Assembly (NCBI GenBank): GCA_043228905.1
Contig: JBHGNT010000016.1
Location: 11,966,001 to 12,030,000, forward strand
DNA from: Azolla caroliniana
Taxonomy: Eukaryota; Plantae; Polypodiophyta
DNA: 64,000 nucleotides
Reading direction: 5' to 3'
Below, one piece after another: positions 43,550 through 64,000 of the stretch (within the stretch, counting starts at the first letter, position 1; the number at the start of each line of letters is the position of its first letter). Below the pieces are notes generated by a model. That model was not told the origin of the DNA. It did not search any database and was given only the letters and a program-made list of their open reading frames with translations. Made by a program: the position numbers and the translations under genes.

Positions 43550-43559
43550 CATTCTGAAT

Positions 43560-44596
43560 TTAGACTATCATTGGAGCACGATAAGATCCAAAATCCTTCG
43601 AAGAGGCCATTGAAATTGTTTTTTATTATCAACACACATTGAAGGACCATAATAAACTTGGATGCATATGGCGAAAAACATCTTTTTCAGCATGGCGAAG
43701 GAGACGAGGACATTCTCACTTTGGGAGAAGTTACAAGCCCTATACGAGAAAAAATCCTCCTCGTCGAAGTTCATATTGATTCGACAATTGTTCAATATGA
43801 AGATGAGAGAGATGGATCTAGTGACCTCCCACATTCACACCTTTATCCAGGTGTTGTCTGAACTCTCTTCCCAAGGGATTAACTTTGAAGAAGACGTTAA
43901 GGCCCTTGCCCTACATTCGAGCTTGTCGGCGAGCTGGGAGGTCTTCTGCAGAACATTCGCCAATAGTTGTCCAAATCTCAATTTGGACGAAACAATCAGA
44001 CAAGTCCTTATTGAGGACATCCGACGACAATCGATGGGCCTCACCATTGATGATTCGACAAAAGCTCACCACTAAACTGAACAAATCGATCGAAGTACCA
44101 ATTGGCCAAAGAGGAAGGAATATCGGTAGCGGTCGAAGTCGAGAAATAATCAATCGAATGTCTTCTACACACATTGCAAGAAAGAAGTCCACCCACAATT
44201 TTTCTGACTGTTGGTTGATAAAGAGAAAGGAGAACGGTCAACGATTTTGGTCGAACACAAGGAAAATCTTATTTGAATCGTTCTCCTACCAACCATCAAG
44301 TCAATGTTGTTGAATCCCAGTTCAGAAAAGTTCCCTCCTTGGAAGACTCCTTGATCGGTGAAGTCCTTTACAGAGCGCAAGATGCGAGAACATGGATGTT
44401 GGACTCTGGCTCCACATTTCATGTGACCCTTGACATCGAAGCCGATTTAGGACTATTCGGTCAGAGCCGACGACATAGTCCAACTCGAAAATGGGTAGAA
44501 ATGCATAATAGCAGGGATTGGAGAGGTCCCCATTTAATTACCGAACGTCAATTCAATCACCCTGCATCGATTATGGCACATACCCGAGCTACAAAG
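43560..44596 (+). pseudogene. Ty1/copia gag-protease fragment
   Basis: LWEKLQALYEKKSSSSK..LIRQLFNMKM and WMLDSGSTFH; cut by the LTR insertion at 44597. Confidence 0.85.
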
Positions 44597-47500
44597 TGTT
44601 GATGGGTGGGGGATGGACTCAATCTCCCAAGGGGGTTCAAATATGAGGGGAGAGAGAGAAAGAAAGAAAAAAGAAAGATATATTAACGTCTTCTAAATCC
44701 AAATTTGGCCTATAAGACAAATGGTTTACAACAAAAAATGGGATATTTACCCATTCATCGAAAGTAAAAAATAAAAATAAAAATAGAGTTTTAAGCTAAA
44801 TAGTTCTAGTAAAATAATAAACATGTTCTACAATGAAAATGATGTTATACTAGGCCTAATTTCATTTCCATCCAAGTCTCTCCAAGAGAAGCGAGAGGTC
44901 AAAGGGTTTCGATGTGGATGTGGCCCGTGGCCCCAATGTAAAAGGTACCCCAACCATAGCTTCTAATCGACGTAGCTCACGTTCCCTTATCTTCTTAATC
45001 CTTTCTACTCCGTGTTGACTTGTTTTGAAGCCCAATATCCAAGGGCGTTTGGTTGTTCTTTGCATTTCGGCTTCCTCAAGAGAGAGGCCGAGCGGCGTAA
45101 GTTTATCCACATTCATCATCTCCCCTTGTTCCTGAAAAATTACACTAGTTACAAGTTGATGAATAGTAAAAGGGTTATGGTTAACATTTTATAATTTATT
45201 CTCCCCATGTTGTTTTAGCTCTAAGATATACCTACCTAGTCTCTTTACATCCGGGGTATCTAATAGTTTGGAGAGGGTGGAAGAGGGTCCTAATATGTCT
45301 TGGTATTCCACTTGTATCTCGGCATAAGTTGGGCACTTGCATGTGAAGTGATACTCATCCTCTATCTCTATGTGGCACAACCTACATAGCCTTTCCTCCC
45401 TAGGGACTCTATTAGCCCAACCATTCTCAATCTCAAGTTGGTGAGATGATATCCTAAGTTGTCGTATGGCCACCCTTAGTGCATTTGATAAGAATGTATC
45501 TAGAGATCTTGCTCGTGTAATAAAACCTAACTAAGAGAAGTGCAAGAAGTGTTCCTTATAGTACAACATTTTAGATGGGAGTGGCTCTCGTGGGGTGATC
45601 CATTTATATCAAGTGTAAATTTTCCATATTTCTTGGCATATCACTTTATTACGGTCTTCATGAGATATTAGAGTTTAGTCAGTCCCATGCTTGTACTTAA
45701 GGGGGTGTAGGTTATTAATGTCTATGCCGTTTGCAAGTAACCAACTCACCACAGTGTTGTACCAAGACCTAGTGTCACCAAATGCATGTAGGGATCGGGA
45801 TGCCTCAAAGGCTCCACGGGATAGCCTATCTTGTGGATGGCTATGTATCCGATGAATAAAAACTACCACTTAAAACAATGCTGCTACTAACATCGGGGGC
45901 AGACTGAACTCTCCTCTAATAATGTCATGTGGTACTGTCGATTTGCTTTGGAGTTGACGTGATAACATCGTCACCAAAGGTCTCTCTAATTGCGTCCACA
46001 TGAAAGATGGTAGACCTAGAGCCCATACTACTGATGCATACATGAGGGACGGGGTCACTAATGAGTCGAAGAGCCATCCCTTAGTCTGTGGCTCTTGAAA
46101 GTATGCCTGGTGGCATTGCCTCTCTAAGAGTTAGAGGGATGCATACCGTCTCGTTAGCCTATCTTTGGCTGCTTGGGTCATCGAGAATTTACTTGAGCGA
46201 GCACTAAAAGTGACTCTCAAGTATACATATGATCCAACTACCTCAACTAATTTTTGAGAGAGGATTAAGTGACATTTACTCCTAACTCGGGAGGATGTAT
46301 GAAAGATAAGGACTTTGGTTTTCGTTAGATTCACTACCAGTCCTCATTGTGTATAAAAGTCATCTAGGGCATTAAGATGCTTTTGTAGGTCATGTTCTGA
46401 CTTTGAGAGCAAGACAATGTCGTCTGTGTAGAGTAAGAGACTAACTTGCGTATCCCCAATAGCTACTCCCTTGCCTCCCTTATGAGAAATAAAATCAGTG
46501 ATCTCATCAATGTAGGTCCCAAAAAGAGTCGGTGATAGGGGGCAACCCTGTTTTACACTAATGGTGTTAGTGAAACAATCAGATAGGCCACTTGGGCATC
46601 TTACACACCCAGACCTTGTTCATATAGGGCATAAATGCCCTAGATCATGTCATTTGGTATCTCCAAGCACTTAAGCCTATCAAACAACTTCTCCCTAGGA
46701 AATGTGTCAAAGGCTTTGCGGAAGTCCACAAAGCAAGAATATAGTTTCTTCTTACGAGCCTTCATATCATCAATTAAGCACCTAAGTGTGAAGATATGGT
46801 CAATAGTGGAGAAGGCTTGTCTAAAGCCAGCCTGCTCAGGGGCTCGAAGACTTAATGTTTCCATATAATCGTTGAGCTCCGCTTCCATCACCGCACCATA
46901 TAGTTTAGCGAGCGTATGACCTATCATAATGGTCCTATATGTATTTGGGTCCATTGGGTCCCCTCCTTTATGTATAGGGGCCACTATGTTCATGGTCCAT
47001 TGTGGTGGAAAACCCTCGGGGAGGGTGTGGTTGAAGATTAGAGTGAGAAAGGGGGCTAGGCACTCTCGAGCATATATGATGTGCTCGGGATCCTGTGTGG
47101 TCCATGGATTTCCTATGTTGTAATTTTTTTATGACCTTCGTGACCCTAGAGGTCGTGAAAAGTGTCCCCATGGTAGGTTGGGGTGTGGAAGGCATTGGAA
47201 TGGGTGGTTGATTCGGGACATGGTAGAGTCTCTCAATATATGTATGCCAAATATTTCGGATCCTCGATGGGTGTTTGTGCTCGCGGTTCCCGTAGTCTCT
47301 TCCATGCAAGGGCACAATCCCTAGTCATGAGCCTATGGTAGAGTTCCCAATATTGGGATGCTTCCCAAGCTCATCTTTTACAATGTGTCATCTTGCGCAT
47401 CTCTTTTCGAGCCCGTACTGAGGAAATAGTACCACTAAGTCGCGACACTTTAAGTTGTCTATACAACTCTACAATCCTCGTCATACCACTTGTTCTGTGG

Positions 47501-50035
47501 CATAGACCCTATTCTACTATGATTTGAGTGTTTTGTGTATGGGAAGCTACTAATTGATGCTGAGTGAAGGGTGTGCACGAGTTCTATAATGAGGTTCTCT
47601 AAAGGCAAGTAAGAATCAAAAGAGGAGAGATGGGCTTGAACATGTTGGGAGTAGATGTCAGCGAGCTCATGCGTGAAATGTATTATGGTGTGATGGTTTG
47701 GTTGACTAGAGTTGGTGGCGTGGGAGGTGTCGCATTTTAGCTCAAAGTATAGGAAGCTATGGTCTACACCAATGGGGCATGTGGCCACCCAGAAGGAGTT
47801 AACCATGTGGGTAGCCTCAGGGTGTCCTATTAGGTAATCAACTGTGCTTTCCCCTCCTCCATGTGGGAAACATGTGAATGCTTCTGAGCCCGGCCACTTG
47901 GCTAAGCCATTATATATGATCATCTGGTGTCGGCTTCCAAGTTCAAGCAGATGATGGCCAAAGTTGGTGGCGCCCGCACGTTGATCCTTTGATGTACGTG
48001 TTATGTCTAAGTCTAAAGGGTCGACATTCACCATTTATAGGTTTCTAACCATTTGAAATATTGTGCATTGTCGGGATTGGGTTCTCACATTGAAATCCCC
48101 TATAAGGAAGACTTCCCCTTAGGAAGAATATCGGATTATGTCATCCGATAAAGGTTCGTATGGAGAAGGCCCATGCAGCGTTCCTTCATCAACTATACTT
48201 GCCTCTCCAGCCATATTATACCAGGATCCTTTCGGGGGAAGTAATACACGGCGATAAATATCACATGATCCTTGGTAGTGAGAACTTTCACCCACATAAA
48301 ACGGGCTTCTAGGTCTTTCTTTAGTATTTCTATCCTATTATGTATCTCTCTCCGAAATAGTATCGCAACCCCTCCAAACCCTCTAGTAGTATGTCGATGT
48401 GAGGTTTGTCTAAAGACAGATTCCCAACAAAAACCGTCAACTCGTGGTAGTCCTCGATTTGGGCTCTGATGTGTTTCTACTAAACAAATTATGTCAAATA
48501 CCTTCAAAATCTCCTCTAAACGGCCAGGGTGTGTCAAAAGTGCACCGTTACAGTTCCATAAAGTCATCCTAAGTTTATTGTTTGTCACATCGGCCACACG
48601 CCGTCAATTGGAGGCACAATCATTTGTTATCACACGTCAGTCTCGGTAAAAAGCATGATGCCCCTCTTTATAAGCTTCTATGACTCGCTGCATACAAGTT
48701 TTACGATGCTCAATTTGCATCTTGGTCGGGTCTTCATCAAGCGTCCCCGCCCAATCCTCGAAGAATTGGTCTCTTTTTAAAGAATGTGATTCTAGATTCT
48801 AAGTCCTTAAACTGAAGGACCAAAGCTCTTTTCCTAATGGTGTCACGTCCTACCCTCCAAATTTTAGTAATTGGTAGGGCTTCGTACCCTAATGTTTGTG
48901 CATCTTCATCAGGAGATGCCCCTTCCTTGAGCCCAATAACTTGTACATTTAGGCGTCGAGCTTGACATTTTTCCTCCTCATGGGTAGTGTTTACAATATT
49001 TTCATCCTTTAGTTCCTTTTTAATATTAGTACGTTCTACTACATCAACCCACCTAGTTTTTGCTAATTCCATATCGCTTTTAACTTGTTCCTTAACCTTT
49101 TTTATTGCATCCTTAATATCCTCTAGGGAAGATATTTGACCATCTTCCCTAGATGTCTCAAGGTCCTTAACTTGTTTCTGAATATTCGTGTTGTCTACTT
49201 TAAGTTTCGTTATTTCAGCAATAAGCACTTCTTTTTCTTCCTTATCTTTTTGTTTTTCAGCTTCAATCTCTTTTGCCCATTTTTCTATTTTAACTAAACT
49301 GTTAAGGACATCTAAAAGTTCTTCCTTACTTATAATTTCTTCATGTGTTTCCTTATGGTTTCGTCTAGAAATCATGTTGTAAATCAAACGATAAAAGAAA
49401 GAAAAGACAAAGAGGACAGAAAAACTTAGCCAAGCATCGATGCCTTGCGTGCTAGGTTCGAGTGTAGAAGCACATGTATGCTCTCTCGTTTACTCAACCG
49501 ATGACATTGTCAAAAGCGTAGGTGATAGCGGCAGCCAACAACGACGACAACGGCAATGACTACACACAACAACGACGGCGGTAGCGGCGACGGTCGAGAA
49601 CTGACGACAACGATGATGACGGTAATGGTGACGGCGACAGACGATAAACAACGGCGGCGGCAGTAGCAACAACGACATCGGCCGCAAACGACGGCGACAA
49701 CAGGCGACGATAGCAGTAGACGGTGATGACAACAACAGAAAGAGCCATTATTGAGAGAGAGAGAGAGAGAGAGATGCACAGAGAATGAGAGAGGGAGAAT
49801 CGAGACAGACACAGTTGAGGGGTAACTTCAATATATTTCCCCTTTTTCCATGCCCCATTGGTGGGGTCTAAATAGTACAAGATCTCATCATTACAAAAAG
49901 CCGAGTGGGGGTAGTTACACCTACTTACCCCACCTAACACTCACACATTAACATTTCATATTACATATTACACATTGCACCTTACACACCATACACATTA
50001 TGTCGTAACCCTCCCGTACACCTATACGGGTAACA
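44597..50035 (-). mobile_element. 3' LTR of a minus-strand Ty3 element (pieces 44597-~44658 and ~49753-50035), split by a LINE
   Basis: The two pieces align in order with the reverse complement of LTR 4595-4940 (TGTTG..GGGTGGGGG..CCCAAGGGGGTT; ..TACGGGTAACA); the flank 50036-50145 resembles 5155-5227 plus 5883-5918. Confidence 0.72.
44660..49752 (-). mobile_element. Full-length decayed RTE-X-like LINE (ORF1 ~49387-48600; ORF2 48597-44862)
   Basis: Coiled-coil ORF1 with RRLNVQVIGL..YLDEDLT; ORF2 APE (LWNCNG, CLVETH, GDFN, STVDYL, DH), RT (FVDFRKAFD, VKQGCPLSP, YTDD), C-terminal LRISSHQLEIE..REERLCRLC..EDEYHF..C; TC-rich tail. Clade and ends are approximate. Confidence 0.85.
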
Positions 50036-50831: not shown

Positions 50832-50839
50832 TATAAATA
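50832..50839 (+). promoter_or_regulatory. Candidate TATA box of the ParB-MTase gene
   Basis: TATAAATA, then a leader with AGAGCA repeats and ACCATG at 50965. Confidence 0.5.
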
Positions 50840-50964
50840 AGAAGACCTTGTCATATTTCAATCACACGAAGCACAAGAGCACATAGAGCAAACAGAGCAA
50901 CCAGAGCACACAGAGCACGTCACACGAAAGTGAGATCTCCGCCTAAACTTCAACAAGATCAACC

Positions 50965-53900
50965 ATGTCTTCAAAGAAAATCGAGCGCCAGGACTCCAGG
51001 AAGCCTCTGAGGCTGTGGACATTTTTGTAAATATGTTTTAGCACTCAAGAACTCGATACGGCGTATCTAGTTCCTATATAAAACACAAACTTCATACAGG
51101 AACTCGATACGGCGTATCGAGTTCTTGTATGAAGTTTGTGTTTTATACAGGAACTCGATCCGGTGTATCGAGTTCTTGTCAATAGTTTGCGTTTTAAACA
51201 GGAACTCGATCCGGCGTATCGAGTTCTTGTCAATAGTTTGCGTTTTAAATAGGAACTCGATACGTCGTATCGAGTTCCTATATAAAGTTTGTTTTTTAAA
51301 CAGGAACTCGATACGCCGTATCGAGTTCCTGTTTAAAGTTTAGGTTTTATACAGGAACTCGATACGCCATAACGAGTTCCTGTTTGAAGTTTGTGTTTTA
51401 AACAGGAACTCGATACGGCGTATCGAGTTCCTGTCTTATGTTCGTGTGTTATATAGGAACTCGATACGGCGTATCGAGTTCTTGTACAAATTTTGTGTTT
51501 TGTTGTATATAGTATGCGTTTTAAACAGGAACTTGTAACGAGTTCCTGTATAAAACACGAACATAATACAGGAACTCGATACGCCGTATCGAGTTCTTGT
51601 GTAAAGTTTGTGTTTGATACATGAACTCGATACCCTGCATCGAGTTCATGTATAAACACGAACTATATGCAGGAACACGATACGACGTAAAGAGTTTTGA
51701 ACCCTAAAACACACAATTTAAAGAGGAATATTGTCTATTTGGGGCAACAATTTAGTATTGTGTGAAAAGATATCTAACTTTCTGTCAAAATCAGACTTTT
51801 TTTATGGAGATTTGCCATATTTTGTAACAAATAGGGGCCTAAATTATAGAGGTTTTATGACCTAGTATAGCTTAAAATAGTAGAAAATAACCCACAAATT
51901 ACCTTTATGATGCCAAATTCAAGTCTATCATATGCAAATTCTCTAGAATATGGATATGGAATCAATATAAGCCATACCTACCCTTCAAGATAACATATAT
52001 CCTTGTATACTTATTAAGATATATATTTTCTAAGTTGAATAGCCCTTACTAGAATGGATTTCTGAATAAAGGACTACCATGTTCACTCAATGCATGATTG
52101 ATATTTTTAGTTTGCCACAAATCGCCTGCAGCTAGTTCTTATCTTCGTCTAATTATGCGTATTTTAATATACAACCTTAATCTACGTGACCACCTAACTT
52201 ATGTTTTCGCATGTCCTTTCTTAAATAGGTCGTTTGAGAACTTGTCAGACCGACTTGTGAAGAAGATAAAGCTCCGGATACAGGGCTCTCCAATTGAAAC
52301 CCAGACCCTAATAACTCCCAAAAACATGAAGAGAGGAAAGAAGCTTCTCTTCAACGAGGAGACAAAATCTCAACCACCCAATGAGGTCAGCCAGAAGAAA
52401 ATATTAGTAGCTACTGGTGGTGAAGACCTTCCTAACCGTGATCTAACGGACAAGGAATGGTGTATGCAATACGTCGACTCCAAGAAAAAAGTTGTGTTGT
52501 ATATTGCAAAGAAGAAGGGCAAGGGGCAGCTTGAAAATGAAACCGCATTTATGTATGGCTGTATTCTACGATTTGACTACGAAGATTCAGATTCGGCCAA
52601 CATACTTGTAATGATAGAGTGCTCTAAGGGGGTACGTAAAGTGTTCCTTTCTGAAGATCTTCTAGTAAAGGAATCTTGTGGGCCAGAAGCTTTTAAAAAA
52701 GATCTCGAAAGCTCCCATAACCTTATTGTTACCTTGAGGCCTTATATACAAGGCCATGTAAGTCTAAGGGAGCCATTGCCCTCCCCAGTAAAGGCCCCAA
52801 AAAGGGCATCTAAAGTACAATCAAGACCACCAAAGAAGAAGACCACTAAAATGTCGGACTCCAACTTATCAAGCTCAAACGAAGATGAGGACACTAAGGG
52901 GATGCTAGGAGTTGAGTTGGCACCGGGTGTGTTGTCATTCGAGTAGAATAAGATACGGAGAGAGTTAATGCAGTGTAAACTGGTCAAGAAAGGGCAAGTG
53001 TTTAATTTGCCTATAACACACATCCATCGGCCCCCTATTGATGAAAAAACAGAATGAAGACCACTTGAGATTAGAGAGCCACACCGAATGCATGTTCAAA
53101 ATCTCAAGAAAAAAATGAAAATTAATCCACATGCTACCGTAGTGCCTTTTATTGTTATGGTGGATCCTAAAGAATGTGAAACCATTGAAGATTTTGATAT
53201 AAAAAAGCATGATCAATATAATTACTTTTTCATTGGTGGATCGCATTCGGCGGAGGCACGTTGGCAACTTGTGAGAGAACATCCAACGACTTTCTTCTTC
53301 AAGTATGCCGAGTGCAAAATTTATGTGGGTCTCACAACTGAAGAGGCAAAGCTATTGGCATGGGACCACAATAACGATAATGACTATAGGCAGAAAATGT
53401 TATCGATTGAGCGTATAAGGTTCTTCCACCACGAGTATTTGGATGTCAAACAAAAGTTTGGTGTGAAGCTACATCCTGGCCTACGACGTCAATGCTTACA
53501 TGAAGTCGACATTGTGGTAGATGATAATGTTAAGTACGATGGTCTTCGAAAATATGAGTCATGGTTTCAACTGGCCTTTAGAGATGGAGAAGTATGGGAC
53601 CTACAAGATCAAATCTTCTCAATGTGGGAGAATAAGGAGGTCAAGGGTCAACGACAAAAGAAATGTAAGGTAGACCCTCAACTAGAATTAAAGTCACAAG
53701 CGGCCAAGAAAATTGATTTGACAATTGAAGAAGCGGTTGACGACATGAAGCTGTCTTTGTGGAGAGCGATGCAAGGTATTAAGGACGAGCATCTTCTTGT
53801 GTCTGTTTTGTCAAGAGTTGTAGCCAAAGACTTAAGGCTTGAAGAAATGGTCACTGAGTTCAATAAGTAAGTCTTTCAAATAGTGATATTGAAGTCAATA

Positions 53901-54898
53901 TGGTGCAATTGAAAGTTCTAATCTCGTTTTCCAATTTCACAGTCATAAGGTGTACATGAAGATCCAAGAAGTTATGATGAAACAACTTGGATGTATAATT
54001 TGGGAACAAGTGACCGAGGATTATCCTCTAACGTCTTCATATAAGGCGTTATCGGAGTATTTTATTGCATTCAAGGATTGGGTTAGTATTGGTGATTTTT
54101 CATTAAGCTTTCATCATATGTAGAGCTTGTAGAATAAAACTTGATGTCCTATTGCTTCTATTAGAAACTGTGTCATGGCAAGAAACAAGGAGAAGTTAAG
54201 GATATACACGATTTCCCGACATCCTTCCTTGTACATCTCGAGAGATCCAGAAAAGAAAAGGATCGTCACTTAGTCAAGGCGTACGAAATGGAGGAAGATG
54301 GCTCCTTCAAAAAAATTAGCCACAAAAAAGATATTACGAGAGATCTTTACTACATACATTGTGGTTTGCAGCGATGTCGTTGACATGATCCAAAAAGTGC
54401 CAAAGAAGGAATATACACTAATGATTGTGGATATTCCTTACGGATTTCGAATGGTAGGGTCATCATACGACGATGAACCATTTAGGTTTAAACAGTTCGA
54501 GAAGATGGTCAAGGATTTTGTTGAGCTAACGACTGCATCATTGTGGAGAATAATTGTCTTTCACAGTATGGACCAAGGGTACTCGGTAGGTCAAGCTTTG
54601 AGATCTCGTTGCCATGGCAAGCACCTTGCCTGGTAAGGATTATTTATAGGTCTCATTCACTATATTGCATTTCTTAAGATTGTTCAATCTATTCTTAACT
54701 CGATGTAATATTTGTTATAGGATAAAAACCAATGTAAATAGAGGGCCAACCTTTCGGTTCGTTAATGCCATTGAATACATCACGGTTGGCTACTTCGATG
54801 AAATTAAGAAACAAAGAATCAAGGAGCATTCTAATGAAGTGGGAGGTTCAAATCTGTTGGTATATCCAATAGTGAAACGGAAATTGCGACATGTCACC
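50965..54898 (+). pseudogene. ParB-like/DNA amino-methyltransferase fusion, copy 1 (3'-truncated); exons 50965-51026 (tentative), 52229-53866, 53943-54081, 54165-54632, 54721-54898
   Basis: Appears identical to copy 2 at an offset of 3630; stops at 52944 and 53055; the exon-1 donor TT|GTAAAT joins the 52228 acceptor in frame. Confidence 0.8.
51045..51700. repeat. Array of 13 palindromes (33 bp, ACAGGAACTCGATACG-N-CGTATCGAGTTCCTGT) with ~18-bp spacers, period 51
   Basis: Units start at 51045, 51096, 51147, 51198, 51249, 51300, 51351, 51402, 51453, 51525 (short), 51568, 51619 and 51669. Confidence 0.97.
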
Positions 54899-57800
54899 AT
54901 CGAGTTCTTGTATGAAGTTTGTGTTTTATACAGGAACTCGATCCGGTGTATCGAGTTCTTGTCAATAGTTTGCGTTTTAAACAGGAACTCGATCCGGCGT
55001 ATCGAGTTCTTGTCAATAGTTTGCGTTTTAAATAGGAACTCGATACGTCGTATCGAGTTCCTATATAAAGTTTGTTTTTTAAACAGGAACTCGATACGGC
55101 GTATCGAGTTCTTGTACAAATTTTGTGTTTTGTTGTATATAGTATGCGTTTTAAACAGGAACTTGTAACGAGTTCCTGTATAAAACACGAACATAATACA
55201 GGAACTCGATACGCCGTATCGAGTTCTTGTGTAAAGTTTGTGTTTGATACATGAACTCGATACCCTGCATCGAGTTCATGTATAAACACGAACTATATGC
55301 AGGAACACGATACGACGTAAAGAGTTTTGAACCCTAAAACACACAATTTAAAGAGGAATATTGTCTATTTGGGGCAACAATTTAGTATTGTGTGAAAAGA
55401 TATCTAACTTTCTGTCAAAATCAGACTTTTTTTATGGAGATTTGCCATATTTTGTAACAAATAGGGGCCTAAATTATAGAGGTTTTATGACCTAGTATAG
55501 CTTAAAATAGTAGAAAATAACCCACAAATTACCTTTATGATGCCAAATTCAAGTCTATCATATGCAAATTCTCTAGAATATGGATATGGAATCAATATAA
55601 GCCATACCTACCCTTCAAGATAACATATATCCTTGTATACTTATTAAGATATATATTTTCTAAGTTGAATAGCCCTTACTAGAATGGATTTCTGAATAAA
55701 GGACTACCATGTTCACTCAATGCATGATTGATATTTTTAGTTTGCCACAAATCGCCTGCAGCTAGTTCTTATCTTCGTCTAATTATGCGTATTTTAATAT
55801 ACAACCTTAATCTACGTGACCACCTAACTTATGTTTTCGCATGTCCTTTCTTAAATAGGTCGTTTGAGAACTTGTCAGACCGACTTGTGAAGAAGATAAA
55901 GCTCCGGATACAGGGCTCTCCAATTGAAACCCAGACCCTAATAACTCCCAAAAACATGAAGAGAGGAAAGAAGCTTCTCTTCAACGAGGAGACAAAATCT
56001 CAACCACCCAATGAGGTCAGCCAGAAGAAAATATTAGTAGCTACTGGTGGTGAAGACCTTCCTAACCGTGATCTAACGGACAAGGAATGGTGTATGCAAT
56101 ACGTCGACTCCAAGAAAAAAGTTGTGTTGTATATTGCAAAGAAGAAGGGCAAGGGGCAGCTTGAAAATGAAACCGCATTTATGTATGGCTGTATTCTACG
56201 ATTTGACTACGAAGATTCAGATTCGGCCAACATACTTGTAATGATAGAGTGCTCTAAGGGGGTACGTAAAGTGTTCCTTTCTGAAGATCTTCTAGTAAAG
56301 GAATCTTGTGGGCCAGAAGCTTTTAAAAAAGATCTCGAAAGCTCCCATAACCTTATTGTTACCTTGAGGCCTTATATACAAGGCCATGTAAGTCTAAGGG
56401 AGCCATTGCCCTCCCCAGTAAAGGCCCCAAAAAGGGCATCTAAAGTACAATCAAGACCACCAAAGAAGAAGACCACTAAAATGTCGGACTCCAACTTATC
56501 AAGCTCAAACGAAGATGAGGACACTAAGGGGATGCTAGGAGTTGAGTTGGCACCGGGTGTGTTGTCATTCGAGTAGAATAAGATACGGAGAGAGTTAATG
56601 CAGTGTAAACTGGTCAAGAAAGGGCAAGTGTTTAATTTGCCTATAACACACATCCATCGGCCCCCTATTGATGAAAAAACAGAATGAAGACCACTTGAGA
56701 TTAGAGAGCCACACCGAATGCATGTTCAAAATCTCAAGAAAAAAATGAAAATTAATCCACATGCTACCGTAGTGCCTTTTATTGTTATGGTGGATCCTAA
56801 AGAATGTGAAACCATTGAAGATTTTGATATAAAAAAGCATGATCAATATAATTACTTTTTCATTGGTGGATCGCATTCGGCGGAGGCACGTTGGCAACTT
56901 GTGAGAGAACATCCAACGACTTTCTTCTTCAAGTATGCCGAGTGCAAAATTTATGTGGGTCTCACAACTGAAGAGGCAAAGCTATTGGCATGGGACCACA
57001 ATAACGATAATGACTATAGGCAGAAAATGTTATCGATTGAGCGTATAAGGTTCTTCCACCACGAGTATTTGGATGTCAAACAAAAGTTTGGTGTGAAGCT
57101 ACATCCTGGCCTACGACGTCAATGCTTACATGAAGTCGACATTGTGGTAGATGATAATGTTAAGTACGATGGTCTTCGAAAATATGAGTCATGGTTTCAA
57201 CTGGCCTTTAGAGATGGAGAAGTATGGGACCTACAAGATCAAATCTTCTCAATGTGGGAGAATAAGGAGGTCAAGGGTCAACGACAAAAGAAATGTAAGG
57301 TAGACCCTCAACTAGAATTAAAGTCACAAGCGGCCAAGAAAATTGATTTGACAATTGAAGAAGCGGTTGACGACATGAAGCTGTCTTTGTGGAGAGCGAT
57401 GCAAGGTATTAAGGACGAGCATCTTCTTGTGTCTGTTTTGTCAAGAGTTGTAGCCAAAGACTTAAGGCTTGAAGAAATGGTCACTGAGTTCAATAAGTAA
57501 GTCTTTCAAATAGTGATATTGAAGTCAATATGGTGCAATTGAAAGTTCTAATCTCGTTTTCCAATTTCACAGTCATAAGGTGTACATGAAGATCCAAGAA
57601 GTTATGATGAAACAACTTGGATGTATAATTTGGGAACAAGTGACCGAGGATTATCCTCTAACGTCTTCATATAAGGCGTTATCGGAGTATTTTATTGCAT
57701 TCAAGGATTGGGTTAGTATTGGTGATTTTTCATTAAGCTTTCATCATATGTAGAGCTTGTAGAATAAAACTTGATGTCCTATTGCTTCTATTAGAAACTG

Positions 57801-58528
57801 TGTCATGGCAAGAAACAAGGAGAAGTTAAGGATATACACGATTTCCCGACATCCTTCCTTGTACATCTCGAGAGATCCAGAAAAGAAAAGGATCGTCACT
57901 TAGTCAAGGCGTACGAAATGGAGGAAGATGGCTCCTTCAAAAAAATTAGCCACAAAAAAGATATTACGAGAGATCTTTACTACATACATTGTGGTTTGCA
58001 GCGATGTCGTTGACATGATCCAAAAAGTGCCAAAGAAGGAATATACACTAATGATTGTGGATATTCCTTACGGATTTCGAATGGTAGGGTCATCATACGA
58101 CGATGAACCATTTAGGTTTAAACAGTTCGAGAAGATGGTCAAGGATTTTGTTGAGCTAACGACTGCATCATTGTGGAGAATAATTGTCTTTCACAGTATG
58201 GACCAAGGGTACTCGGTAGGTCAAGCTTTGAGATCTCGTTGCCATGGCAAGCACCTTGCCTGGTAAGGATTATTTATAGGTCTCATTCACTATATTGCAT
58301 TTCTTAAGATTGTTCAATCTATTCTTAACTCGATGTAATATTTGTTATAGGATAAAAACCAATGTAAATAGAGGGCCAACCTTTCGGTTCGTTAATGCCA
58401 TTGAATACATCACGGTTGGCTACTTCGATGAAATTAAGAAACAAAGAATCAAGGAGCATTCTAATGAAGTGGGAGGTTCAAATCTGTTGGTATATCCAAT
58501 AGTGAAACGGAAATTGCGACATGTCACC
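51116..58528 (+). repeat. Near-perfect tandem duplication 51116-54898 / 54899-58528
   Basis: Translated ORFs are identical at offset 3630; the only difference seen is loss of 153 bp (3 array units) in copy 2. Confidence 0.95.
54899..55330. repeat. Second copy of the palindrome array, three units shorter
   Basis: Starts mid-palindrome at the duplication junction; same unit order minus ~51300-51452. Confidence 0.95.
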
Positions 58529-59087
58529 AGGACAGAACGAGGACTTGTCAACCCATACCAAAAACCTCAATGACTTATGATGCGCTTGATCGAGATGTTT
58601 TCGGTCGAAGGAGACTGGATATTAGACCTCTTTTCTGGCACAGGTATTCCTTGAACTAGGGTAACGATCTTGAGATAACCAATACTGAATCTTTTTTGTT
58701 TGAGAACTAATTCTTCTTGTTACTTTCTTCACAGGAACGACGTCTGCATGTGCATTGAAGCTCTTTAGAAACACGGTTGCATTGGACAAGGAAGAGGAGC
58801 AGGTTATATTTATAAACATGAGGATTAAGGCTTTGTGGGAGTGCACAGACCAGGACGAGGAGGTCGGTGCAAAAAACCTCACTAATACTGAAAAGTTTCA
58901 ACCTGCTTCGCAAGAGCCTATCCCTCCATTAGCTGGGGAACTGAGGGAGCTAATAGAGCTTGATGATGAGTTTATAGAAGATATTTCGTTGGCTTGGCTA
59001 ACAGGGGAAGCCAATGCACGTATAGCTAAAGAGACTTCTATACAGGATGATGAAGAAAATGACATTGACGATTTGATTGCTATGTAA
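55859..59087 (+). pseudogene. ParB-like/beta-class N6-adenine or N4-cytosine DNA methyltransferase fusion, copy 2; exons 55859-57496, 57573-57711, 57795-58262, 58351-58643, 58735-59087
   Basis: ParB-like: YFFIGGSHSAEA..VGLTTEEAKLLAWDHN..RQKMLSIER. MTase: VCSDVVDMIQKVP..LMIVDIPYG (motif IV), WIK, NPYQKP.*LMMRLIEMFSVEGDWILDLFSGTGTTSACALKLFRNTVALD (motifs X, I, II). Four GT-AG introns of 76-91 nt; three stops and one frameshift (~57965). Confidence 0.9.
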
Positions 59088-59516
59088 TAGACTCTTTTAA
59101 AAACGCGAAATGTAATGTTTGGATTTCACATTATTAATACAAATTTTGGGTTTTACTTGGTGGACTCTATTCTTTATAATTTTCTATATGTTTCAATTTT
59201 ATTTTTATATACTTGGTTAGTAGACTTATGACATTGGTTTCACCACATGCATTGTTGACTACCAAATTTATGGAGAAACATGAATTAGTTTAAATTGAGG
59301 CTGATTTTGGTCAAAATTTACCTTAACATAACATGGTCGTAGAATTGTTGCCATGACTGTCCATGCTGTTATTATGGATCTTTGTCTTCTATTGTTAAAA
59401 TTATTATGTTTCTCTTCCATTGCTGCTTAGATTGTGTAGTGTGTTGATAATGGTTCCACTAGCGTTATCCGCATGTTTTTATACGCTTGTAGTTCCATTA
59501 GCGTTATCGTTCGGAG

Positions 59517-59791
59517 TTTGATCCCGTGTGAATCACCTTAGCAATAGATTAGATCAATTTTAAATACAAGTATGAAAGCCTTAATAGGTTTGTTATTTCT
59601 ACCACATTATCCTAAAGTTCACTGTCTTACATTGTCCACAATTATATACATATGGTTTGATCCCATACGAACAAACTGAGGAATAGATCAGATAAACTTT
59701 AAATACAAGTATTAAATACTTTAATAAGTTAGTTATTCCAATCACATTATCCTAAAGTGCATTATCCTACATTGTCCACAATTATATACAT
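59517..59791. repeat. Diverged ~140-bp tandem duplication
   Basis: TTTGATCCC...TAAATACAAGTAT...CACATTATCCTAAAGT...ACATTGTCCACAATTATATACAT occurs twice. Confidence 0.8.
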
Positions 59792-60149
59792 GCAAGTATG
59801 GGTCAAAGTATAAATTATAACTCATTTTATTAGTATGGTTACAAGTACACCTCATATTTTTGTAAAACTTACCAAATTAATATAAGTCTTTAACTTAGTG
59901 TTTCTCATGTCGCACATTAGTGACATATTGAGCCATTGTTGAACTTTATTATGCCTACATTAACTTATCAACACATCCAAACTTGCATGATTTCTAATGA
60001 TCTCCACTCGTAAACCTATCATGTATTTTTATATTTGCAAATTCTAATCAAGTTGTGGAACATGTGATACTAGTGCATCCAATTTTTGTAGAGAGGGTAT
60101 ATTTGGATAGTTTCAAGAAGATTCTACAAGTGGAATGCGCAATCCTTCC

Positions 60150-61841
60150 ACTTGTGAACGCGATCGCATCTATGTTGAACTCGGTTTCGACTGTGGCGGA
60201 TGGGGCTAATTTGACTGTATACCAGGATGTTGACTCGTCGAATACTACATCCTTACTCACTCATACCTTCTTGGTGGAAGGGTTGAAGGACTTATACCCT
60301 TTTTGATCGAGTGAATACCCTATGAGTATACATTTCTCCGACTTGGGATTGAGCTTTTGCCGCTTCTCGTCGGGAATATGTACATATGCAATTGAACCGA
60401 ATATCCTGACATGAGATAGATCTGGTTTCTTCCCATAGAACTTTTCGCAGGGGGTAACTTCGTGCACTCCTGATGTAGTGAAGCAATTCATCAGATAAAC
60501 GACTGTATTCTCCGCTTTAACCCAATTTGACTTTGGCAGATGTTTCTCATTCATCATTTCCCTTGCCATCTCAAGTATGTGCCGATTCTTGCGTTCGGCT
60601 ACTCTGTTTTGATGAGGTGTGTGTCGGCAGGTAAACTCCCGTTGGATTCCTTCTTGTCGAAGAAGTACTCTTTGTCGCTATCCGATCAAAGGCATCTAAC
60701 ATGCCCACCGGTTGCCTTTTCCACTTCATTTTTGAACCTTTGGACGTGTCCAAACACTTCGCTCTTCTTCCACATAGGGTAGATCCAGGTATGTTTGGAG
60801 AAGTTGTTGATGAATGTTACGTAGTATCGGCAACCACCGAATGTTGCCATCTGGGTTGGTCCCCATACATCTGAGTGTATTACATATTGGATCCCTTTGC
60901 TTACATTCCTCTCCTTTGGGAACAGTTGACGGTGTTGTTTGTCGAGTTGACAAGCTTCACACACGCCTACTCTCTCCTTTTCGGTAAAAGTCGGAAATCT
61001 GAAGACAACTCCTTTCAACTGCATTCCTCTGAGCTTTTTGAGGTTAATGTGACCAATTCTCTTGTGCCACAGCTCTATGTCGACATCGGCTCTCTAGCCC
61101 TTGGCATACATTGCCAAGTTCATCTCGTGAGAGTCGAGTATGAACATCCAACCTTCTCTATGACCCCGGACGATGAGTTGGCCTTCTTTTTTGATGAAGC
61201 ATCCTCCGTTGTTGAAGCGGACTTGCATGCCTTGTTTGACTATATGGCCAACTGAGACCAAGTTCTTTGTTATTGTAGGAACATGCAGAACATTCTTGAT
61301 GTAGGTTTGATTGCCTTCATCTCCAAATGGGACATTGGCAATATGTTGAATGGGGTTACTTGTGTGATCCCCAATTTCCACATAGTCAGGTCGTTCGGGC
61401 TTCCATAGCTCCTTGAACCAATCCTCGTGGGATGTCATGTGTTTGGATGCACCCGAGTCGATGAACAATACATCTTCTGACTTGGAGGTGTTGGACGGGT
61501 TGGAGGTTGTCATTGAGTTCACTCTGTACCTCATCACAAACATTCCGCCACGATTTTCATAGTCGGAGTTGAAGGCGTAGTTTGTGAGTTGTCGGCTTGT
61601 GCAGGCCGATTCACTCTTCTTTTTCCGACACTCTGCCTCATAGTAGCCGAATTTACCACAATATTCAAACTGAGCGGGATTATTTTGTCGGTTGGGTCTG
61701 GCTTGATTACTCCCCCTTCTTCCAAATGCTCCACCTCGTGCGTTCGACATGTCTTGTCGGTAATAGAGGTTATGTTCTCGGGATTGCTCTTGGTTGTGTC
61801 GTCCGTGACCGAATCGACCTCTTCTTCCCCGACCTTGTCCT
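60150..61841 (-). pseudogene. Ty1/copia gag end-protease-integrase fragment
   Basis: Knuckle remnant YCGKFGYYEAEC, FIDSGASKHM, LWHKRIGH, CEACQ, IHSDVWGP, SEKCILIGYS, KDVVFDE. Confidence 0.9.
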
Positions 61842-64000
61842 TGAAAGGGCTACACGCTCTCAAAAACAACACTCGGCCACAACCGAGTCTAGGATCAAAC
61901 ACAGAAAACGGGTAATGTACGCACGACACAATAAAGAGAAGAGTACACAAGATGTTTACGTGGAAAACCCAAACACAGGAAAAACCACGGCAGTCCACAG
62001 ACTACAAACTATCACTATGTTACAATATACAATAGATGAACACACAAGCAACGACCTCTTGTTCACTGTCTTCGCCACAGGCGGTGGTTACAACAGAGAC
62101 AACATCCCCTTCGTCTCTCACTCTCTCTCTCACGCACTGTACAGAGGTTGCACCAACAACAACGTCTCACAGCCACACTGTTTGCCCTAAGTCATATTTA
62201 TACTAATATGACTTTTCATCTATTTACAAAAATAGCCCCAGTGAGCTCTCTGGAACATATTTACATATATGTCCCTTCCATCCAATGAGAGGTTCTCACC
62301 GGGCCTGCAACATCCGGTTCTCACCAGGTCTTCCGTTGCCGGATATTCCACATCCGGTTCTCACTAGGTCTTCCGTTGCCGGGTACTCCACATCCGGTTC
62401 TCACCGGGTCTTCTCACTTCCCATCCGGAGGAACCTGTTTCCTAACAAACTCCCCCTTCACTCCGGCATGGGATGTCTTACTAGTCCGATCCGTTTCCGA
62501 CATGCATCCAGCTTATCGTGTATCAGTACTTTAGTCAGCATATCTGACCCGTTCTCGTCCGTGTGGATCTTCGTCAGCACGAACTCTCAATCTTCTACTC
62601 GCTCCCGGATCCAATGATACCTATGTTGGATATGCTTTGTCCTGGAGTGGTACGCTGCGTTCTTGGCAAGGTGGATGGCACTTTGACTGTCGCAATAGAG
62701 CCGGTATTCATCTTGCCGGATACCAAGCTCACTGATGAAGTCCTTCATCCATAATATTTCCTTGCTGGCTTCAACAGCCGCCATGTACTCCGCCTCCGTG
62801 GTTGACAACGCAACCGTCTTCTGCAGCCTCGACTGCCACGAAACAGCTCCCCCTGCATATGTCATTACATACCCGGATGTAGACCGGCTGGTATCCACAT
62901 CAGCCGACATGTCGTCAAGTTGAGGTTTACCGGAGCTGAATCAGAGACACATATTCGAAGTGCCCTTCAAGTATCGGAGTATCCATTTGACCGCGTTCTA
63001 GTGCTCCTTGCCAGGATTGCTCATAAACCGGCTCACCACTCCGACTGCGTATCCAATATCCGGTCGAGTACACACCATTGCGTACATCAAGCTCCCAATG
63101 GCAGAGGCATATGGAACCTTCACCATATCCACCTTCTCTGCTTTCTTCTTCAGGCTTTGCTTACCGGATAATCTGCAGTTTGTTGGAAGTGTCGATCTGA
63201 CCGGTTTTGCGTCTGACATGTTGAACCGTTGAAGCACCTTTGTCACGTACTTCTCTTGTGACAACCACAATTGCTTCTTTGGCCGGTCCCGGATGATATA
63301 CATCCCCAGCATCTGTCTTGCCGGACCCAAGTCTTTCATTGCGAAAGTTCGGTTGAGAGCCTTCTTCAATATCCGTATTTTGGCTTGGTCCCGTCCGACG
63401 ATCAACATGTCGTCCACGTACAGAAGGAGTATCAGGAAGTCGCCTCCTTTGAACTTCTTCACAAACACACAGTGATCGGCCTGCGTGTTGTGGTACCCTT
63501 GATCGGTCATGAAGGAGTCGAACTTCCGGTACCATTGTCGGGGAGCCTGCTTTAGTCCGTACAGGCTCTTCTTCAACCGGCAAACTAGGTGCTCCTTCCC
63601 TTTCTCCAGGAATCCTTCCGGTTGCTACATGTAGATCTCCTCTTCGAGGTCACCGTGAAGGAATGTCGTCTTCACGTCCAGTTGCTCTACCTCGAGGTCC
63701 ATGCTTGCCACTATACTCAGCACCGTCCGGATGGAGGTCATCTTTACTACCGGGGCAAATATCTCGTCGAAGTCCACGCCCTTCTTCTATTGGAACCCCT
63801 TTACCACGATCCTGGCTTTGTATCTCGGGGGGTTGCCGGCATCTCCCGGTTTCAACTTGTACACCCACTTGTTTTGGAGTGCCCGCTTTCCTTTTGGCAA
63901 CTCCACCAATTCATACGTATGGTTCTCATGCAGGGAATCCATCTCATCTTGCATGGCACTTAACCATTTGCAGCTATGGGTGTCACTTTTAGCTTCCTTG
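61842..64000 (-). mobile_element. Ty1/copia element 3' part (RT-RNase H, PPT, 3' LTR 61842-62447), running off the window
   Basis: QLDVKTTFLHG, LKKSLYGLKQAPRQWY, LLYVDDML, TEAEYMA, ADMLTK; PPT GGAGTGAAGGGGGAG at ~62450-62464; TG..CA LTR. Confidence 0.95.

What the first reader, a model, noticed from the sequence alone, without database searches (positions are those of the whole stretch)
50832..59087. Intron-containing ParB + bacterial-type m6A/m4C DNA methyltransferase fusion coupled to its own palindrome array: candidate undescribed TE-borne epigenetic system
Seen: splicing the GT-AG introns stitches the ORF fragments into ~983 aa, comprising an unknown N-terminal region, a ParB/Srx-like domain (IGGSHS in place of the usual IDGHHR; LTTEEAKLLAWDHN), a helical linker, a methyltransferase and an acidic tail. 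Catalytic DIPY precedes the SAM-binding LDLFSGTGTT, which only appears once the intron at 58644-58734 is removed. Established: this motif order defines beta-class amino-MTases (Pfam N6_N4_Mtase); ParB-MTase fusions are common in phages and plasmids; ParB loads on palindromic parS sites; bacterial-derived 4mC MTases are known in a few eukaryotes (bdelloid N4CMT, Marchantia DN4MT1). It is not a plant MET1/CMT/DRM or MT-A70 enzyme. Inference: a horizontally acquired, intronised module in which the ParB-like clamp loads on the adjacent palindromes and spreads an amino-methyl mark over its own element, analogous to VANC proteins acting on VANDAL repeats. This copy is dead (3 stops, 1 frameshift).
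Basis: partly seen in the sequence, partly recalled or inferred. Interest (0 to 1): 0.93.

Follow-up and report, generated by a model that had tools for sequence, protein, structure and literature searches.

The report
Dead plant transposon fragment with ParB-methyltransferase gene
This is a broken, transposase-less and tandemly duplicated piece of a very abundant fern-type DNA transposon whose accessory gene fuses a ParB-like DNA-binding part to a bacterial-style DNA amino-methyltransferase next to an array of palindromes, a design already published for algal transposons and here seen in land plants.

Summary
On the + strand there is a five-exon gene with GT-AG introns. It has an unknown N-terminal region, a ParB/Srx-fold domain, a helical ParB/KorB-like DNA-binding part, a beta-class amino-methyltransferase (DIPY before LDLFSGTGTT) and an acidic tail. 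It carries three stop codons and one frameshift. A 51-bp-phased palindrome array lies upstream.

- 51116-58528 is a 3.8-kb tandem duplication, identical except for three missing array units. Only the second gene copy is complete.
- No transposase is present in the window.
- The idea is not new. A ParB-like methyltransferase opposite a Sola-1 transposase was reported in Ectocarpus in 2025. ParB-like genes beside inverted-repeat arrays were reported in red-algal transposons in 2025.

Relatives in Adiantum, Riccia, Ginkgo and Chara are intact. In Adiantum, Riccia and one metagenome contig they sit head-to-head with a DUF7869 transposase. Arrays of lineage-specific palindromes lie upstream in Adiantum, Riccia and Chara.

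The ParB call rests on fold only, and the CTP-clamp motif is absent. The D-first catalytic motif and the nearest solved enzymes point to N6-adenine rather than N4-cytosine. Binding, methylation and expression are untested. This scan has noted the same family over 100 times elsewhere in this genome.

Verdict: new land-plant member of a known kind.

The parts
51046..51700 (.). Palindrome array 1. It has 12 sites in 51-bp phase. Each unit is a roughly 31-33-bp palindrome (core 10-3-10) plus an 18-20-bp spacer that flips orientation.
51116..54898 (+). Tandem duplication, copy 1 (3783 bp). It holds most of array 1 plus a gene copy truncated inside the methyltransferase exon.
54899..58528 (+). Tandem duplication, copy 2 (3630 bp). 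It is identical to copy 1 except for 153 bp (three array units) missing. The junction at 54898|54899 joins the methyltransferase exon to a point 3-4 nt from a palindrome centre.
54899..55330 (.). Palindrome array 2 (7 sites).
52326..54898 (+). Gene copy 1. It has the same exons and the same two early stops as copy 2. It lacks the end of exon 4, motif I and the tail.
55956..59087 (+). Gene copy 2, the complete pseudogene. It has 5 exons and 4 GT-AG introns (57497-57572, 57712-57794, 58263-58350, 58644-58734).
55956..56573 (+). N-terminal region of unknown fold (about 205 aa). It ends at the in-frame stop at 56574.
   Evidence: no hits; shared with P0036 and, by eye, with the P0005 N-terminus
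56577..57020 (+). ParB/Srx-fold N-domain (GGSHS box, GLT..EA..LAWDHN). It is interrupted by the stop at 56685.
57021..57711 (+). Helical region resembling ParB/KorB/SopB DNA-binding domains, plus a conserved linker exon.
   Evidence: (Z 3.5-5.2)
57964..58934 (+). Beta-class N6/N4 amino-methyltransferase domain spread over three exons. It has motif IV DIPY, W.K.N, NPYQKP (followed by the stop at 58571) and motif I LDLFSGTGTT across intron 4.
57925..57964 (+). +1 frameshift in an A-run within exon 3.
59088..59900 (+). 3' flank that is still family repeat. The element end was not found.
   Evidence: all bins covered by thousands of contigs; no terminal inverted repeat

Best explanation
The span is a dead fragment of a very high-copy cut-and-paste DNA transposon family of non-flowering green plants. 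Relatives occur in a fern (Adiantum), a liverwort (Riccia), Ginkgo and the stonewort Chara.

Shown:
- The family's accessory gene encodes an unknown N-terminal region, a ParB/Srx-fold domain with a ParB/KorB-like helical DNA-binding part, and a beta-class DNA amino-methyltransferase of phage/bacterial type.
- In Adiantum, Riccia and one metagenome contig the gene lies head-to-head with a DUF7869 transposase gene.
- Tandem arrays of lineage-specific palindromes lie upstream of the gene in Adiantum, Riccia and Chara. In one Riccia locus the array lies inside the annotated gene's 5' part.
- The copy in this window has lost the transposase. It carries three stops and a frameshift. Its array-plus-gene part was duplicated in tandem very recently, with the breakpoint beside a palindrome centre.

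Inferred mechanism for intact family members:
- The ParB-like part recognises the palindromes as a site-specific dimeric binder, like ParB on parS or KorB on its operators. A CTP-driven sliding clamp is unlikely.
- This brings the fused methyltransferase to the element's own DNA, in the promoter region between the two genes.
- The methyltransferase probably writes N6-methyladenine rather than N4-methylcytosine.
- The mark may serve self-regulation or escape from host silencing.
For: Homologues:
- phmmer of the 260-aa ParB-region ORF gave 302 hits, 144 below 1e-10.
- Named hits come from Ginkgo, Chara, Riccia and Adiantum.

Methyltransferase:
- Pfam N6_N4_Mtase matches Ginkgo P0005 at 7.6e-18.
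- The window's three methyltransferase exons are about 41% identical to P0005, with breaks at the predicted splice sites.
- A family profile hits the solved adenine methyltransferases M1.HpyAVI/DpnA (4e-13), MboIIA, RsrI and CcrM. These score ahead of the N4-cytosine enzymes (5e-5).
- phrog_67 matches at 1.5e-27. 778 phage records match the methyltransferase part at 23-28% identity.

ParB:
- In an unbiased structure search of the window's own domain model (pLDDT 80), the top 10 of 48,161 chains are all ParB/Srx. The best is PadC, Z 7.7, rmsd 2.8 over 82 residues.
- For an N-domain model of P0036 (pLDDT 90), the Foldseek top 50 are all ParB/Noc/Srx, with a best E-value of 3.4e-4.

Genomic context:
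- A DUF7869 gene lies on the opposite strand next to the gene in L001, L002, L004 and L006.
- Palindrome arrays lie upstream in L001, L002, L003 and L004.
- The window and Riccia L004 both use 12-3-12 palindromes.

This copy:
- No DUF7869 homology anywhere in the window.
- Duplication and junction defined.
- Thousands of 88-99% contigs cover the stretch in three DNA runs.

Literature: PMC12477816 and bioRxiv 10.1101/2025.02.11.637652 propose the same logic for algal elements.
Against: - No sequence-level ParB hit was found (Pfam, PDB profile, PHROGs, NCBIfam). Fold scores are middling (Z below 8).
- The catalytic motif is DIPY, DIPH or DFPY rather than DPPY, so activity is unproven.
- There is no evidence of expression. 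No RNA run holds the stretch. One contig of a guessed RNA run carries a diverged methyltransferase exon.
- Nothing shows that the protein binds the palindromes. In Riccia the same palindromes are scattered over the whole element, including introns and flanks. That would also fit transposase or regulatory sites.
- The element ends and the transposon superfamily were not established here.
- The 100%-identical duplication could be a misassembly.
Confidence: 0.7

Rival explanations
1. The palindrome array is not a loading site for the ParB-methyltransferase. It would instead be the transposase's own binding site, or an operator/promoter element of the divergent gene pair. In the operator case the ParB-like protein would act as a KorB-like repressor rather than as a targeting device for methylation.
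For: - The array sits in the intergenic (promoter) region between the divergent genes in L001 and L002.
- In Riccia the same palindrome recurs at both flanks and inside introns, like subterminal transposase sites.
- A second DUF7869 element in L001 has its own, different palindromes around the transposase gene. Whether it has a ParB gene is unknown.
- KorB is among the structural matches.
Against: - The array stays with the ParB-methyltransferase gene where no transposase is present: in this window and in Chara L003.
- The size and symmetry of the palindromes fit dimeric HTH binders such as ParB.
Confidence: 0.3
2. The 3.8-kb tandem duplication is an assembly artefact of a repeat-rich genome. 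The true locus would hold one array and one gene copy.
For: - There are zero mismatches over 3.4 kb between the copies.
- The family has thousands of near-identical copies, which invites misassembly.
- No listed contig bridges 54898|54899.
Against: - The two arrays differ by a clean three-unit deletion.
- The junction is a specific novel joint beside a palindrome centre, as expected for hairpin-mediated breakage.
- One contig in another sample joins 59152 back to 55025. This hints that array-mediated tandem joints recur in the family.
Confidence: 0.25
3. The methyltransferase domain of the family is catalytically degenerate, or acts on something other than double-stranded DNA (ssDNA or RNA). 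The gene's role would then be DNA binding only.
For: - Motif IV departs from [DNSH]PP[YFW] at its second position: DIPY, DIPH, DFPY, DAPY, DLPY.
- The best solved match is labelled DpnA, a class said to act on ssDNA (PMC4738411).
Against: - The D, the P and the aromatic residue of motif IV are kept across Ginkgo, Adiantum, Chara and a metagenome relative, over deep divergence. The one exception is H in Ginkgo.
- NPYQKP and the F/S-G-S/T-G-T SAM loop are kept in the same sequences.
Confidence: 0.15

Closest known systems
Sola1-1_Ec32 accessory protein of Ectocarpus (PMC12477816, 2025)
   Same: [quoted passage not shown] It is encoded on the strand opposite the transposase inside a DNA transposon. 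The authors propose that it binds and marks its own element.
   Different: - It comes from a brown alga and a 21.5-kb giant element, and the protein is 1104 aa.
- No palindrome array is mentioned in the text I read.
- Direct sequence homology to the plant family was not tested here, because no sequence was on hand.
- The family here is in land plants and charophytes, next to a DUF7869 transposase.
Plavaka PAG3 of the red alga Bostrychia (bioRxiv 10.1101/2025.02.11.637652; Curr Biol 2025)
   Same: It is a transposon accessory gene with an N-terminal ParB-like domain. Tandem arrays of inverted repeats lie next to the gene. The authors infer binding and modification of the element's own DNA.
   Different: The fused enzyme is a 2OG-dependent oxygenase, not a methyltransferase. 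The N6A methylase there is a separate gene (PAG2). The transposon superfamily is different.
Phage/plasmid ParB-methyltransferase fusions and beta-class enzymes (phrog_67, M1.HpyAVI/DpnA, M.MboIIA, M.RsrI, CcrM)
   Same: The methyltransferase core, the motif order IV then I, and the NPxQKP and FxGxGT motifs are shared.
   Different: - Identity is only about 25%, and only over the methyltransferase.
- The ParB-like part has no sequence match to phage ParB.
- The plant genes have spliceosomal introns and a eukaryotic transposon context.
Chromosomal/plasmid ParB, Noc, KorB (CTP-dependent clamps on parS, NBS, OB palindromes)
   Same: The N-domain fold and a following helical DNA-binding region are shared. 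Both associate with arrays of short palindromes.
   Different: - The GERRxR CTP box is replaced by GG[NGS]H[ST].
- There is no sequence-level similarity.
- No ParA partner is present.
- The domain is fused to an enzyme.
Marchantia MpDN4MT1a/b and bdelloid N4CMT (eukaryotic 4mC writers of bacterial origin)
   Same: They are bacterial-type amino-methyltransferases working in a eukaryote.
   Different: DN4MT1 has the TSPPY motif of N4C enzymes and is a host gene expressed in sperm (10.1101/2021.02.12.428880). The present family has D in the first position, is TE-borne and carries a ParB-like domain.

Membership tests
ParB/Srx superfamily | ParB N-terminal domain fold (beta-alpha core shared with sulfiredoxin) | tested here: met
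   - Window model: top 10 of 48,161 chains are all ParB/Srx. The best is PadC, Z 7.7, rmsd 2.8 over 82 residues. Only 7 chains reach Z>=5 and all are ParB/Srx.
- P0036 N-domain model (pLDDT 90): Foldseek top 50 are all ParB/Noc/Srx, best E-value 3.4e-4.
ParB/Srx superfamily | Sequence-profile match (Pfam ParBc or equivalent) | tested here: not met
   There was no ParB hit in Pfam, PHROGs or NCBIfam for the window's exons or for the intact homologues scanned in each. A family profile also found no ParB in the PDB.
Canonical CTP-dependent ParB clamp (ParB, Noc, KorB) | GERRxR CTP-binding box in the N-domain | tested here: not met
   The equivalent position reads GG[NGS]H[ST]..A in nearly all aligned family members, and GGSHS in the window.
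Canonical CTP-dependent ParB clamp (ParB, Noc, KorB) | HTH DNA-binding domain that recognises a palindromic site | tested here: inconclusive
   Residues 111-270 of the model align to the KorB, ParB and SopB DNA-binding domains at Z 3.5-5.2 only. Binding cannot be tested with these tools.
Beta-class N6/N4 DNA amino-methyltransferase (Pfam PF01555) | Profile match to N6_N4_Mtase | tested here: met
   - The window's exons are blank in Pfam.
- Homologues match: P0005 at 7.6e-18 and P0036 at 6.1e-10.
- The window's exons are 41% identical to P0005 across the domain.
- A family profile hits solved members at 4e-13.
Beta-class N6/N4 DNA amino-methyltransferase (Pfam PF01555) | Motif IV before motif I (FxGxG SAM loop) | tested here: met
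   DIPY at exon 3 precedes LDLFSGTGTT, which is formed across intron 4.
Beta-class N6/N4 DNA amino-methyltransferase (Pfam PF01555) | Catalytic [DNSH]PP[YFW] motif (PMC4738411) | tested here: inconclusive
   D, the second P and the aromatic residue are conserved. The first P is I, F, A or L in the family, and Ginkgo has H for Y.
N4-cytosine methyltransferases (DN4MT1, N4CMT type) | Serine in the first position of motif IV (SPPY/TSPPY) | tested here: not met
   The family has D in that position. N6A enzymes outscore N4C enzymes in the PDB profile search.
Sola1 / DUF7869 DNA transposon | Transposase gene within the element | tested here: not met
   - There is no DUF7869 homology anywhere in the 64-kb window.
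- It is present opposite the gene in L001, L002, L004 and L006.
- That DUF7869 equals Sola1 is a label from earlier notes of this scan and was not tested here.
Sola1 / DUF7869 DNA transposon | Terminal inverted repeats and target-site duplication | tested here: inconclusive
   No inverted repeat was found between the flanks. The family repeat continues past 59900. The left side is occupied by a LINE.
Algal ParB-type transposon accessory genes | ParB-like domain fused to a DNA-modifying enzyme, inside a DNA transposon, opposite the transposase | tested here: met
   The architecture is seen in four relatives' loci. It is described for Ectocarpus in PMC12477816. Sequence homology to the algal proteins was not tested.

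The most novel reading that the evidence does not exclude
Intact members of this family are active writers of N6-methyladenine (or another amino-methyl mark) in ferns, liverworts and Ginkgo. The ParB-like domain would aim them at the palindrome arrays of their own elements. Land plants would then carry a transposon-encoded, self-targeted DNA mark outside the 5mC system. The hairpin-prone arrays would also drive local tandem amplification of the array-plus-gene module, independently of the transposase.
Probability: 0.2. Interest if true: 0.8.

Novelty: new member of a known kind. Interest (0 to 1): 0.45.

Why it matters
Land plants are thought to have few N6-adenine DNA methyltransferases (PMC4738411). 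Reports of 6mA and 4mC in plants are contested. A conserved, high-copy, transposon-borne ParB-fused amino-methyltransferase in ferns, liverworts, Ginkgo and Chara gives a concrete candidate writer and a defined candidate target, the palindrome array. Both can be tested directly.

It also extends to land plants a design so far published only for algae: ParB-like accessory proteins that may bind and modify their own transposon. This particular copy is dead and adds little beyond the family. Its main value is showing that the array stays with the gene when the transposase is gone, and that the array can seed tandem duplication.

Tried and rejected
- Pfam on each exon of the window gene: blank.
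- Sequence-level search for ParB with a family profile against the PDB: only noise. PHROGs and NCBIfam on the ParB part: nothing.
- ESM Atlas on the N-terminal 206 aa: no usable hit. That region stays unexplained.
- The search for homologous proteins with P0036: only Chara and metagenome relatives. No algal Sola1 protein and no bacterial fusion were found, so no phylogeny was built.
- Transposase in the window: tblastn with the Riccia DUF7869 protein and tblastx with the whole Adiantum locus found none.
- Terminal inverted repeats between the flanks: none.
- Expression: no RNA run holds the stretch. A guessed RNA run gave one 475-nt contig that overlaps 35 nt, from a diverged methyltransferase exon. 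This shows neither expression nor silence.
- Junction of the duplication: not confirmed by contigs.
- Papers mentioning DUF7869: none.
- The joined (spliced) protein was never built or sent to any tool. All searches used single exons by reference or intact natural homologues, so no HHpred-like search of a repaired protein was run.
- Complex prediction was not used, because DNA binding cannot be asked of it.
- A domesticated host gene was considered and rejected. The copy is broken and the family has thousands of copies.
Full report
**What is in the sequence**

The + strand between 55956 and 59087 carries a five-exon gene. Its exons are 55956-57496, 57573-57711, 57795-58262, 58351-58643 and 58735-59087. 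All four introns begin with GT and end with AG.

IGGSHS and LTTEEAKLLAWDHN lie in the long ORF 56718-57500. DIPY lies in exon 3. The SAM loop LDLFSGTGTT forms only when intron 58644-58734 is removed.

The gene is broken by in-frame stops at 56574, 56685 and 58571. It also has a +1 frameshift in an A-run near 57934-57940.

Upstream lies a 51-bp-phased array of palindromes with the core AACTCGATAC-NNN-GTATCGAGTT. There are 12 sites in 51050-51696 and 7 sites in 54935-55326. There are none elsewhere in the window, and none are expected by chance.

The span is not one array plus one gene. Positions 51116-54898 and 54899-58528 are a tandem duplication. There are no mismatches over 3.4 kb. The only difference is a clean loss of three array units (153 bp) in the second array.

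The joint at 54898|54899 fuses the methyltransferase exon to a point 3-4 nt from the centre of a palindrome. The first gene copy is therefore truncated, and only the second reaches motif I and the acidic tail.

The duplication is either very recent or a misassembly. The short contigs laid on the stretch did not settle this.

**Domains**

Pfam is blank on every exon. I therefore worked through intact natural homologues and through fold. I built no joined or repaired protein. Exons were searched one by one, by reference.

A phmmer search with the 260-aa ORF against 1.8 billion representatives gave 302 hits, 144 of them below 1e-10. The named hits come from Ginkgo biloba, Chara braunii, Riccia sorocarpa and Adiantum nelumboides.

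*Methyltransferase.*
- Several long homologues carry Pfam N6_N4_Mtase. Ginkgo P0005 matches at 7.6e-18.
- The window's three methyltransferase exons are about 41% identical to P0005. The alignment breaks exactly at the predicted splice sites.
- A profile of the family's methyltransferase domain hits solved beta-class enzymes. M1.HpyAVI/DpnA scores 4e-13, followed by MboIIA, RsrI and CcrM. N4-cytosine enzymes score only about 5e-5.
- PHROGs gives phrog_67 at 1.5e-27. 778 phage records match the methyltransferase part at 23-28% identity.
- Motif IV reads D-[I/F/A/L]-P-[Y/H] in the family.
- N4C enzymes have serine in the first position of this motif (PMC4738411), and Marchantia DN4MT1 has TSPPY (10.1101/2021.02.12.428880). 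Adenine is therefore the likelier target. This is an inference from motif and neighbours, not a measurement.

*ParB.*
- No sequence method sees ParB.
- I made an AlphaFold model of the window's own stop-free stretch 56688-57497 (pLDDT 80) and compared it with 48,161 PDB representatives without a Foldseek pre-filter.
- The ten best chains are all of the ParB/Srx superfamily: PadC (Z 7.7, rmsd 2.8 over 82 residues), pNOB8 ParB, KorB, sulfiredoxin, Spo0J, the KorB DNA-binding domain, serine kinase, SbnI and Atu1540.
- Only seven chains reach Z 5, and rank 50 is at Z 3.0.
- An N-domain model of the intact relative P0036 (pLDDT 90) gives a Foldseek top 50 made only of ParB, Noc, PadC, KorB, sulfiredoxin and other ParB/Srx-fold chains. 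The best E-value is 3.4e-4.
- The fold assignment is therefore sound.
- The second half of the window model resembles the KorB, ParB and SopB DNA-binding domains, but only weakly (Z 3.5-5.2).
- The GERRxR box that binds CTP in clamp-forming ParB proteins is replaced by GG[NGS]H[ST] throughout the family. A site-specific binder is the safer reading.
- The N-terminal 205 aa have no recognisable relative.

**Context in relatives**

| Locus | Source | Opposite-strand neighbour | Palindrome array |
|---|---|---|---|
| L001 | Riccia | DUF7869 gene (7e-55) | 50-bp array between the two genes |
| L002 | Adiantum | DUF7869 homology | array of TGTATTC-NN-GAATACA between the two genes |
| L004 | Riccia | DUF7869 gene | 42-bp array of a 12-3-12 palindrome at the 5' end of the ParB gene |
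| L006 | metagenome contig | DUF7869 gene | not clear |
| L003 | Chara | none within 49 kb | tandem arrays with short palindromes upstream of both copies |

- The 12-3-12 palindrome in L004 has the same architecture as the one in the window.
- L003 holds two intronless copies of the gene.
- Exon breaks are shared between the window and Adiantum.
- Each lineage has its own palindrome sequence.

**This copy**

The window has no DUF7869 homology at all. To the left lies about 1.1 kb of AT-rich sequence. Beyond it is a LINE (reverse transcriptase and endonuclease ORFs at 46640-48597, minus strand). To the right, from about 60050, is a Ty1/copia element. A pectin methylesterase host gene lies at 35355-39108. 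I found no terminal inverted repeats.

Contigs of three DNA runs of two coded organisms cover every part of 54000-59900. Thousands of pieces lie at 88-99% identity, so the family is very abundant and the repeat runs past 59900.

No RNA run holds the stretch.

Earlier notes of this scan report more than 100 sightings of the family elsewhere in this genome. They include intact elements of about 9.3 kb, and they label the transposase Sola1. I did not test those two points.

**How it most likely works**

Shown:
- the domain make-up;
- the bacterial/phage type of the methyltransferase;
- the spliceosomal introns;
- the pairing with a DUF7869 transposase in relatives;
- the array upstream of the gene in four of the six relatives' loci, as in the window itself;
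- the high copy number;
- the death of this copy.

Inferred:
- the ParB-like part binds the palindromes;
- it thereby brings the fused enzyme to the element's own DNA, probably to write 6mA.

The array stays with the gene where the transposase is absent, in this window and in Chara. This speaks mildly for a link to the ParB gene rather than to the transposase.

In Riccia the palindromes are scattered across the whole element, and the array sits in the promoter region. This keeps open a transposase-site or operator reading, the latter like KorB.

**Comparison with what is known**

- The Ectocarpus transposon study describes a 1104-aa protein in Sola1-1_Ec32. It has a ParB-like domain and an N4C/N6A methyltransferase, is transcribed opposite the transposase, and is proposed to bind and epigenetically modify its own element (PMC12477816). 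[quoted passage not shown] - Eukaryotic methyltransferases derived from the phage ParB-terminase locus, and ParB-HTH fusions to methyltransferases in chlorophytes and chytrids, were catalogued in 2015 (PMC4738411).
- My text searches found no description for land plants.

The finding is therefore a new land-plant member of a known kind, not an undescribed system.

**Verdict**

- Interest is moderate at family level: a candidate amino-methyl DNA writer with a defined candidate target in ferns, liverworts and Ginkgo.
- Interest is low for this dead, transposase-less, duplicated copy.
- The same family has already been reported many times by this scan.

Noticed in passing
window 54898|54899 and 51115|51116: The tandem-duplication joint lies 3-4 nt from the centre of a palindrome. 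This is as expected if a hairpin or cruciform in the array caused the break. The two copies are otherwise identical apart from a three-unit array deletion.
   Followed up: partly
window 59152 joined to 55025 (run X4): One contig from another sample joins the gene's 3' flank back to the array, with 9 extra letters between. This hints that head-to-tail array-gene joints occur at other copies too.
   Followed up: no
L001 18064-22101 (Riccia): A second DUF7869 element lies 5 kb from the first. It carries a different palindrome (TCCATGA-NNN-TCATGGA) in a 21-bp tandem array and at both sides of its transposase gene. Whether it has a ParB gene lies beyond the fetched DNA.
   Followed up: partly
L004 10430-10622 (Riccia) versus window 51046-51700: Both arrays use a 12-3-12 palindrome with a shared AACTC stretch and a G+C-rich 3-nt centre, despite fern-liverwort divergence. 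Other lineages use 7-2-7 palindromes.
   Followed up: partly
L003 10115-12168 and 36058-38097 (Chara): The Chara copies of the ParB-methyltransferase gene align without introns, whereas the fern and liverwort copies have about four to five introns. The annotated 1825-aa Chara protein fuses two copies across 26 kb and is probably a mis-annotation.
   Followed up: partly
run X16, 475-nt contig overlapping window 54460-54494: A run guessed to be RNA holds a contig of a diverged family methyltransferase exon. Its flanking letters encode a PYGFRM-like and a KMVKDF-like stretch. It may be DNA carry-over.
   Followed up: no
window 35355-39108 (+): An intron-containing host gene for pectin methylesterase, with a PMEI domain (6.5e-14) and a Pectinesterase domain (3.3e-68).
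   Followed up: partly
window 45189-49940 (-) and 60048-63600 (-): A LINE (Exo_endo_phos and RVT_1 ORFs) abuts the left side of the element fragment. A Ty1/copia element (RVT_2, Pol_BBD) lies to its right. Copia gag-like fragments lie at 42375-44600.
   Followed up: partly
window 59516-59791: Two direct repeats of about 140 bp lie in the 3' flank of the gene, inside the family repeat.
   Followed up: no
It is unclear whether it belongs to the element.
   Followed up: no
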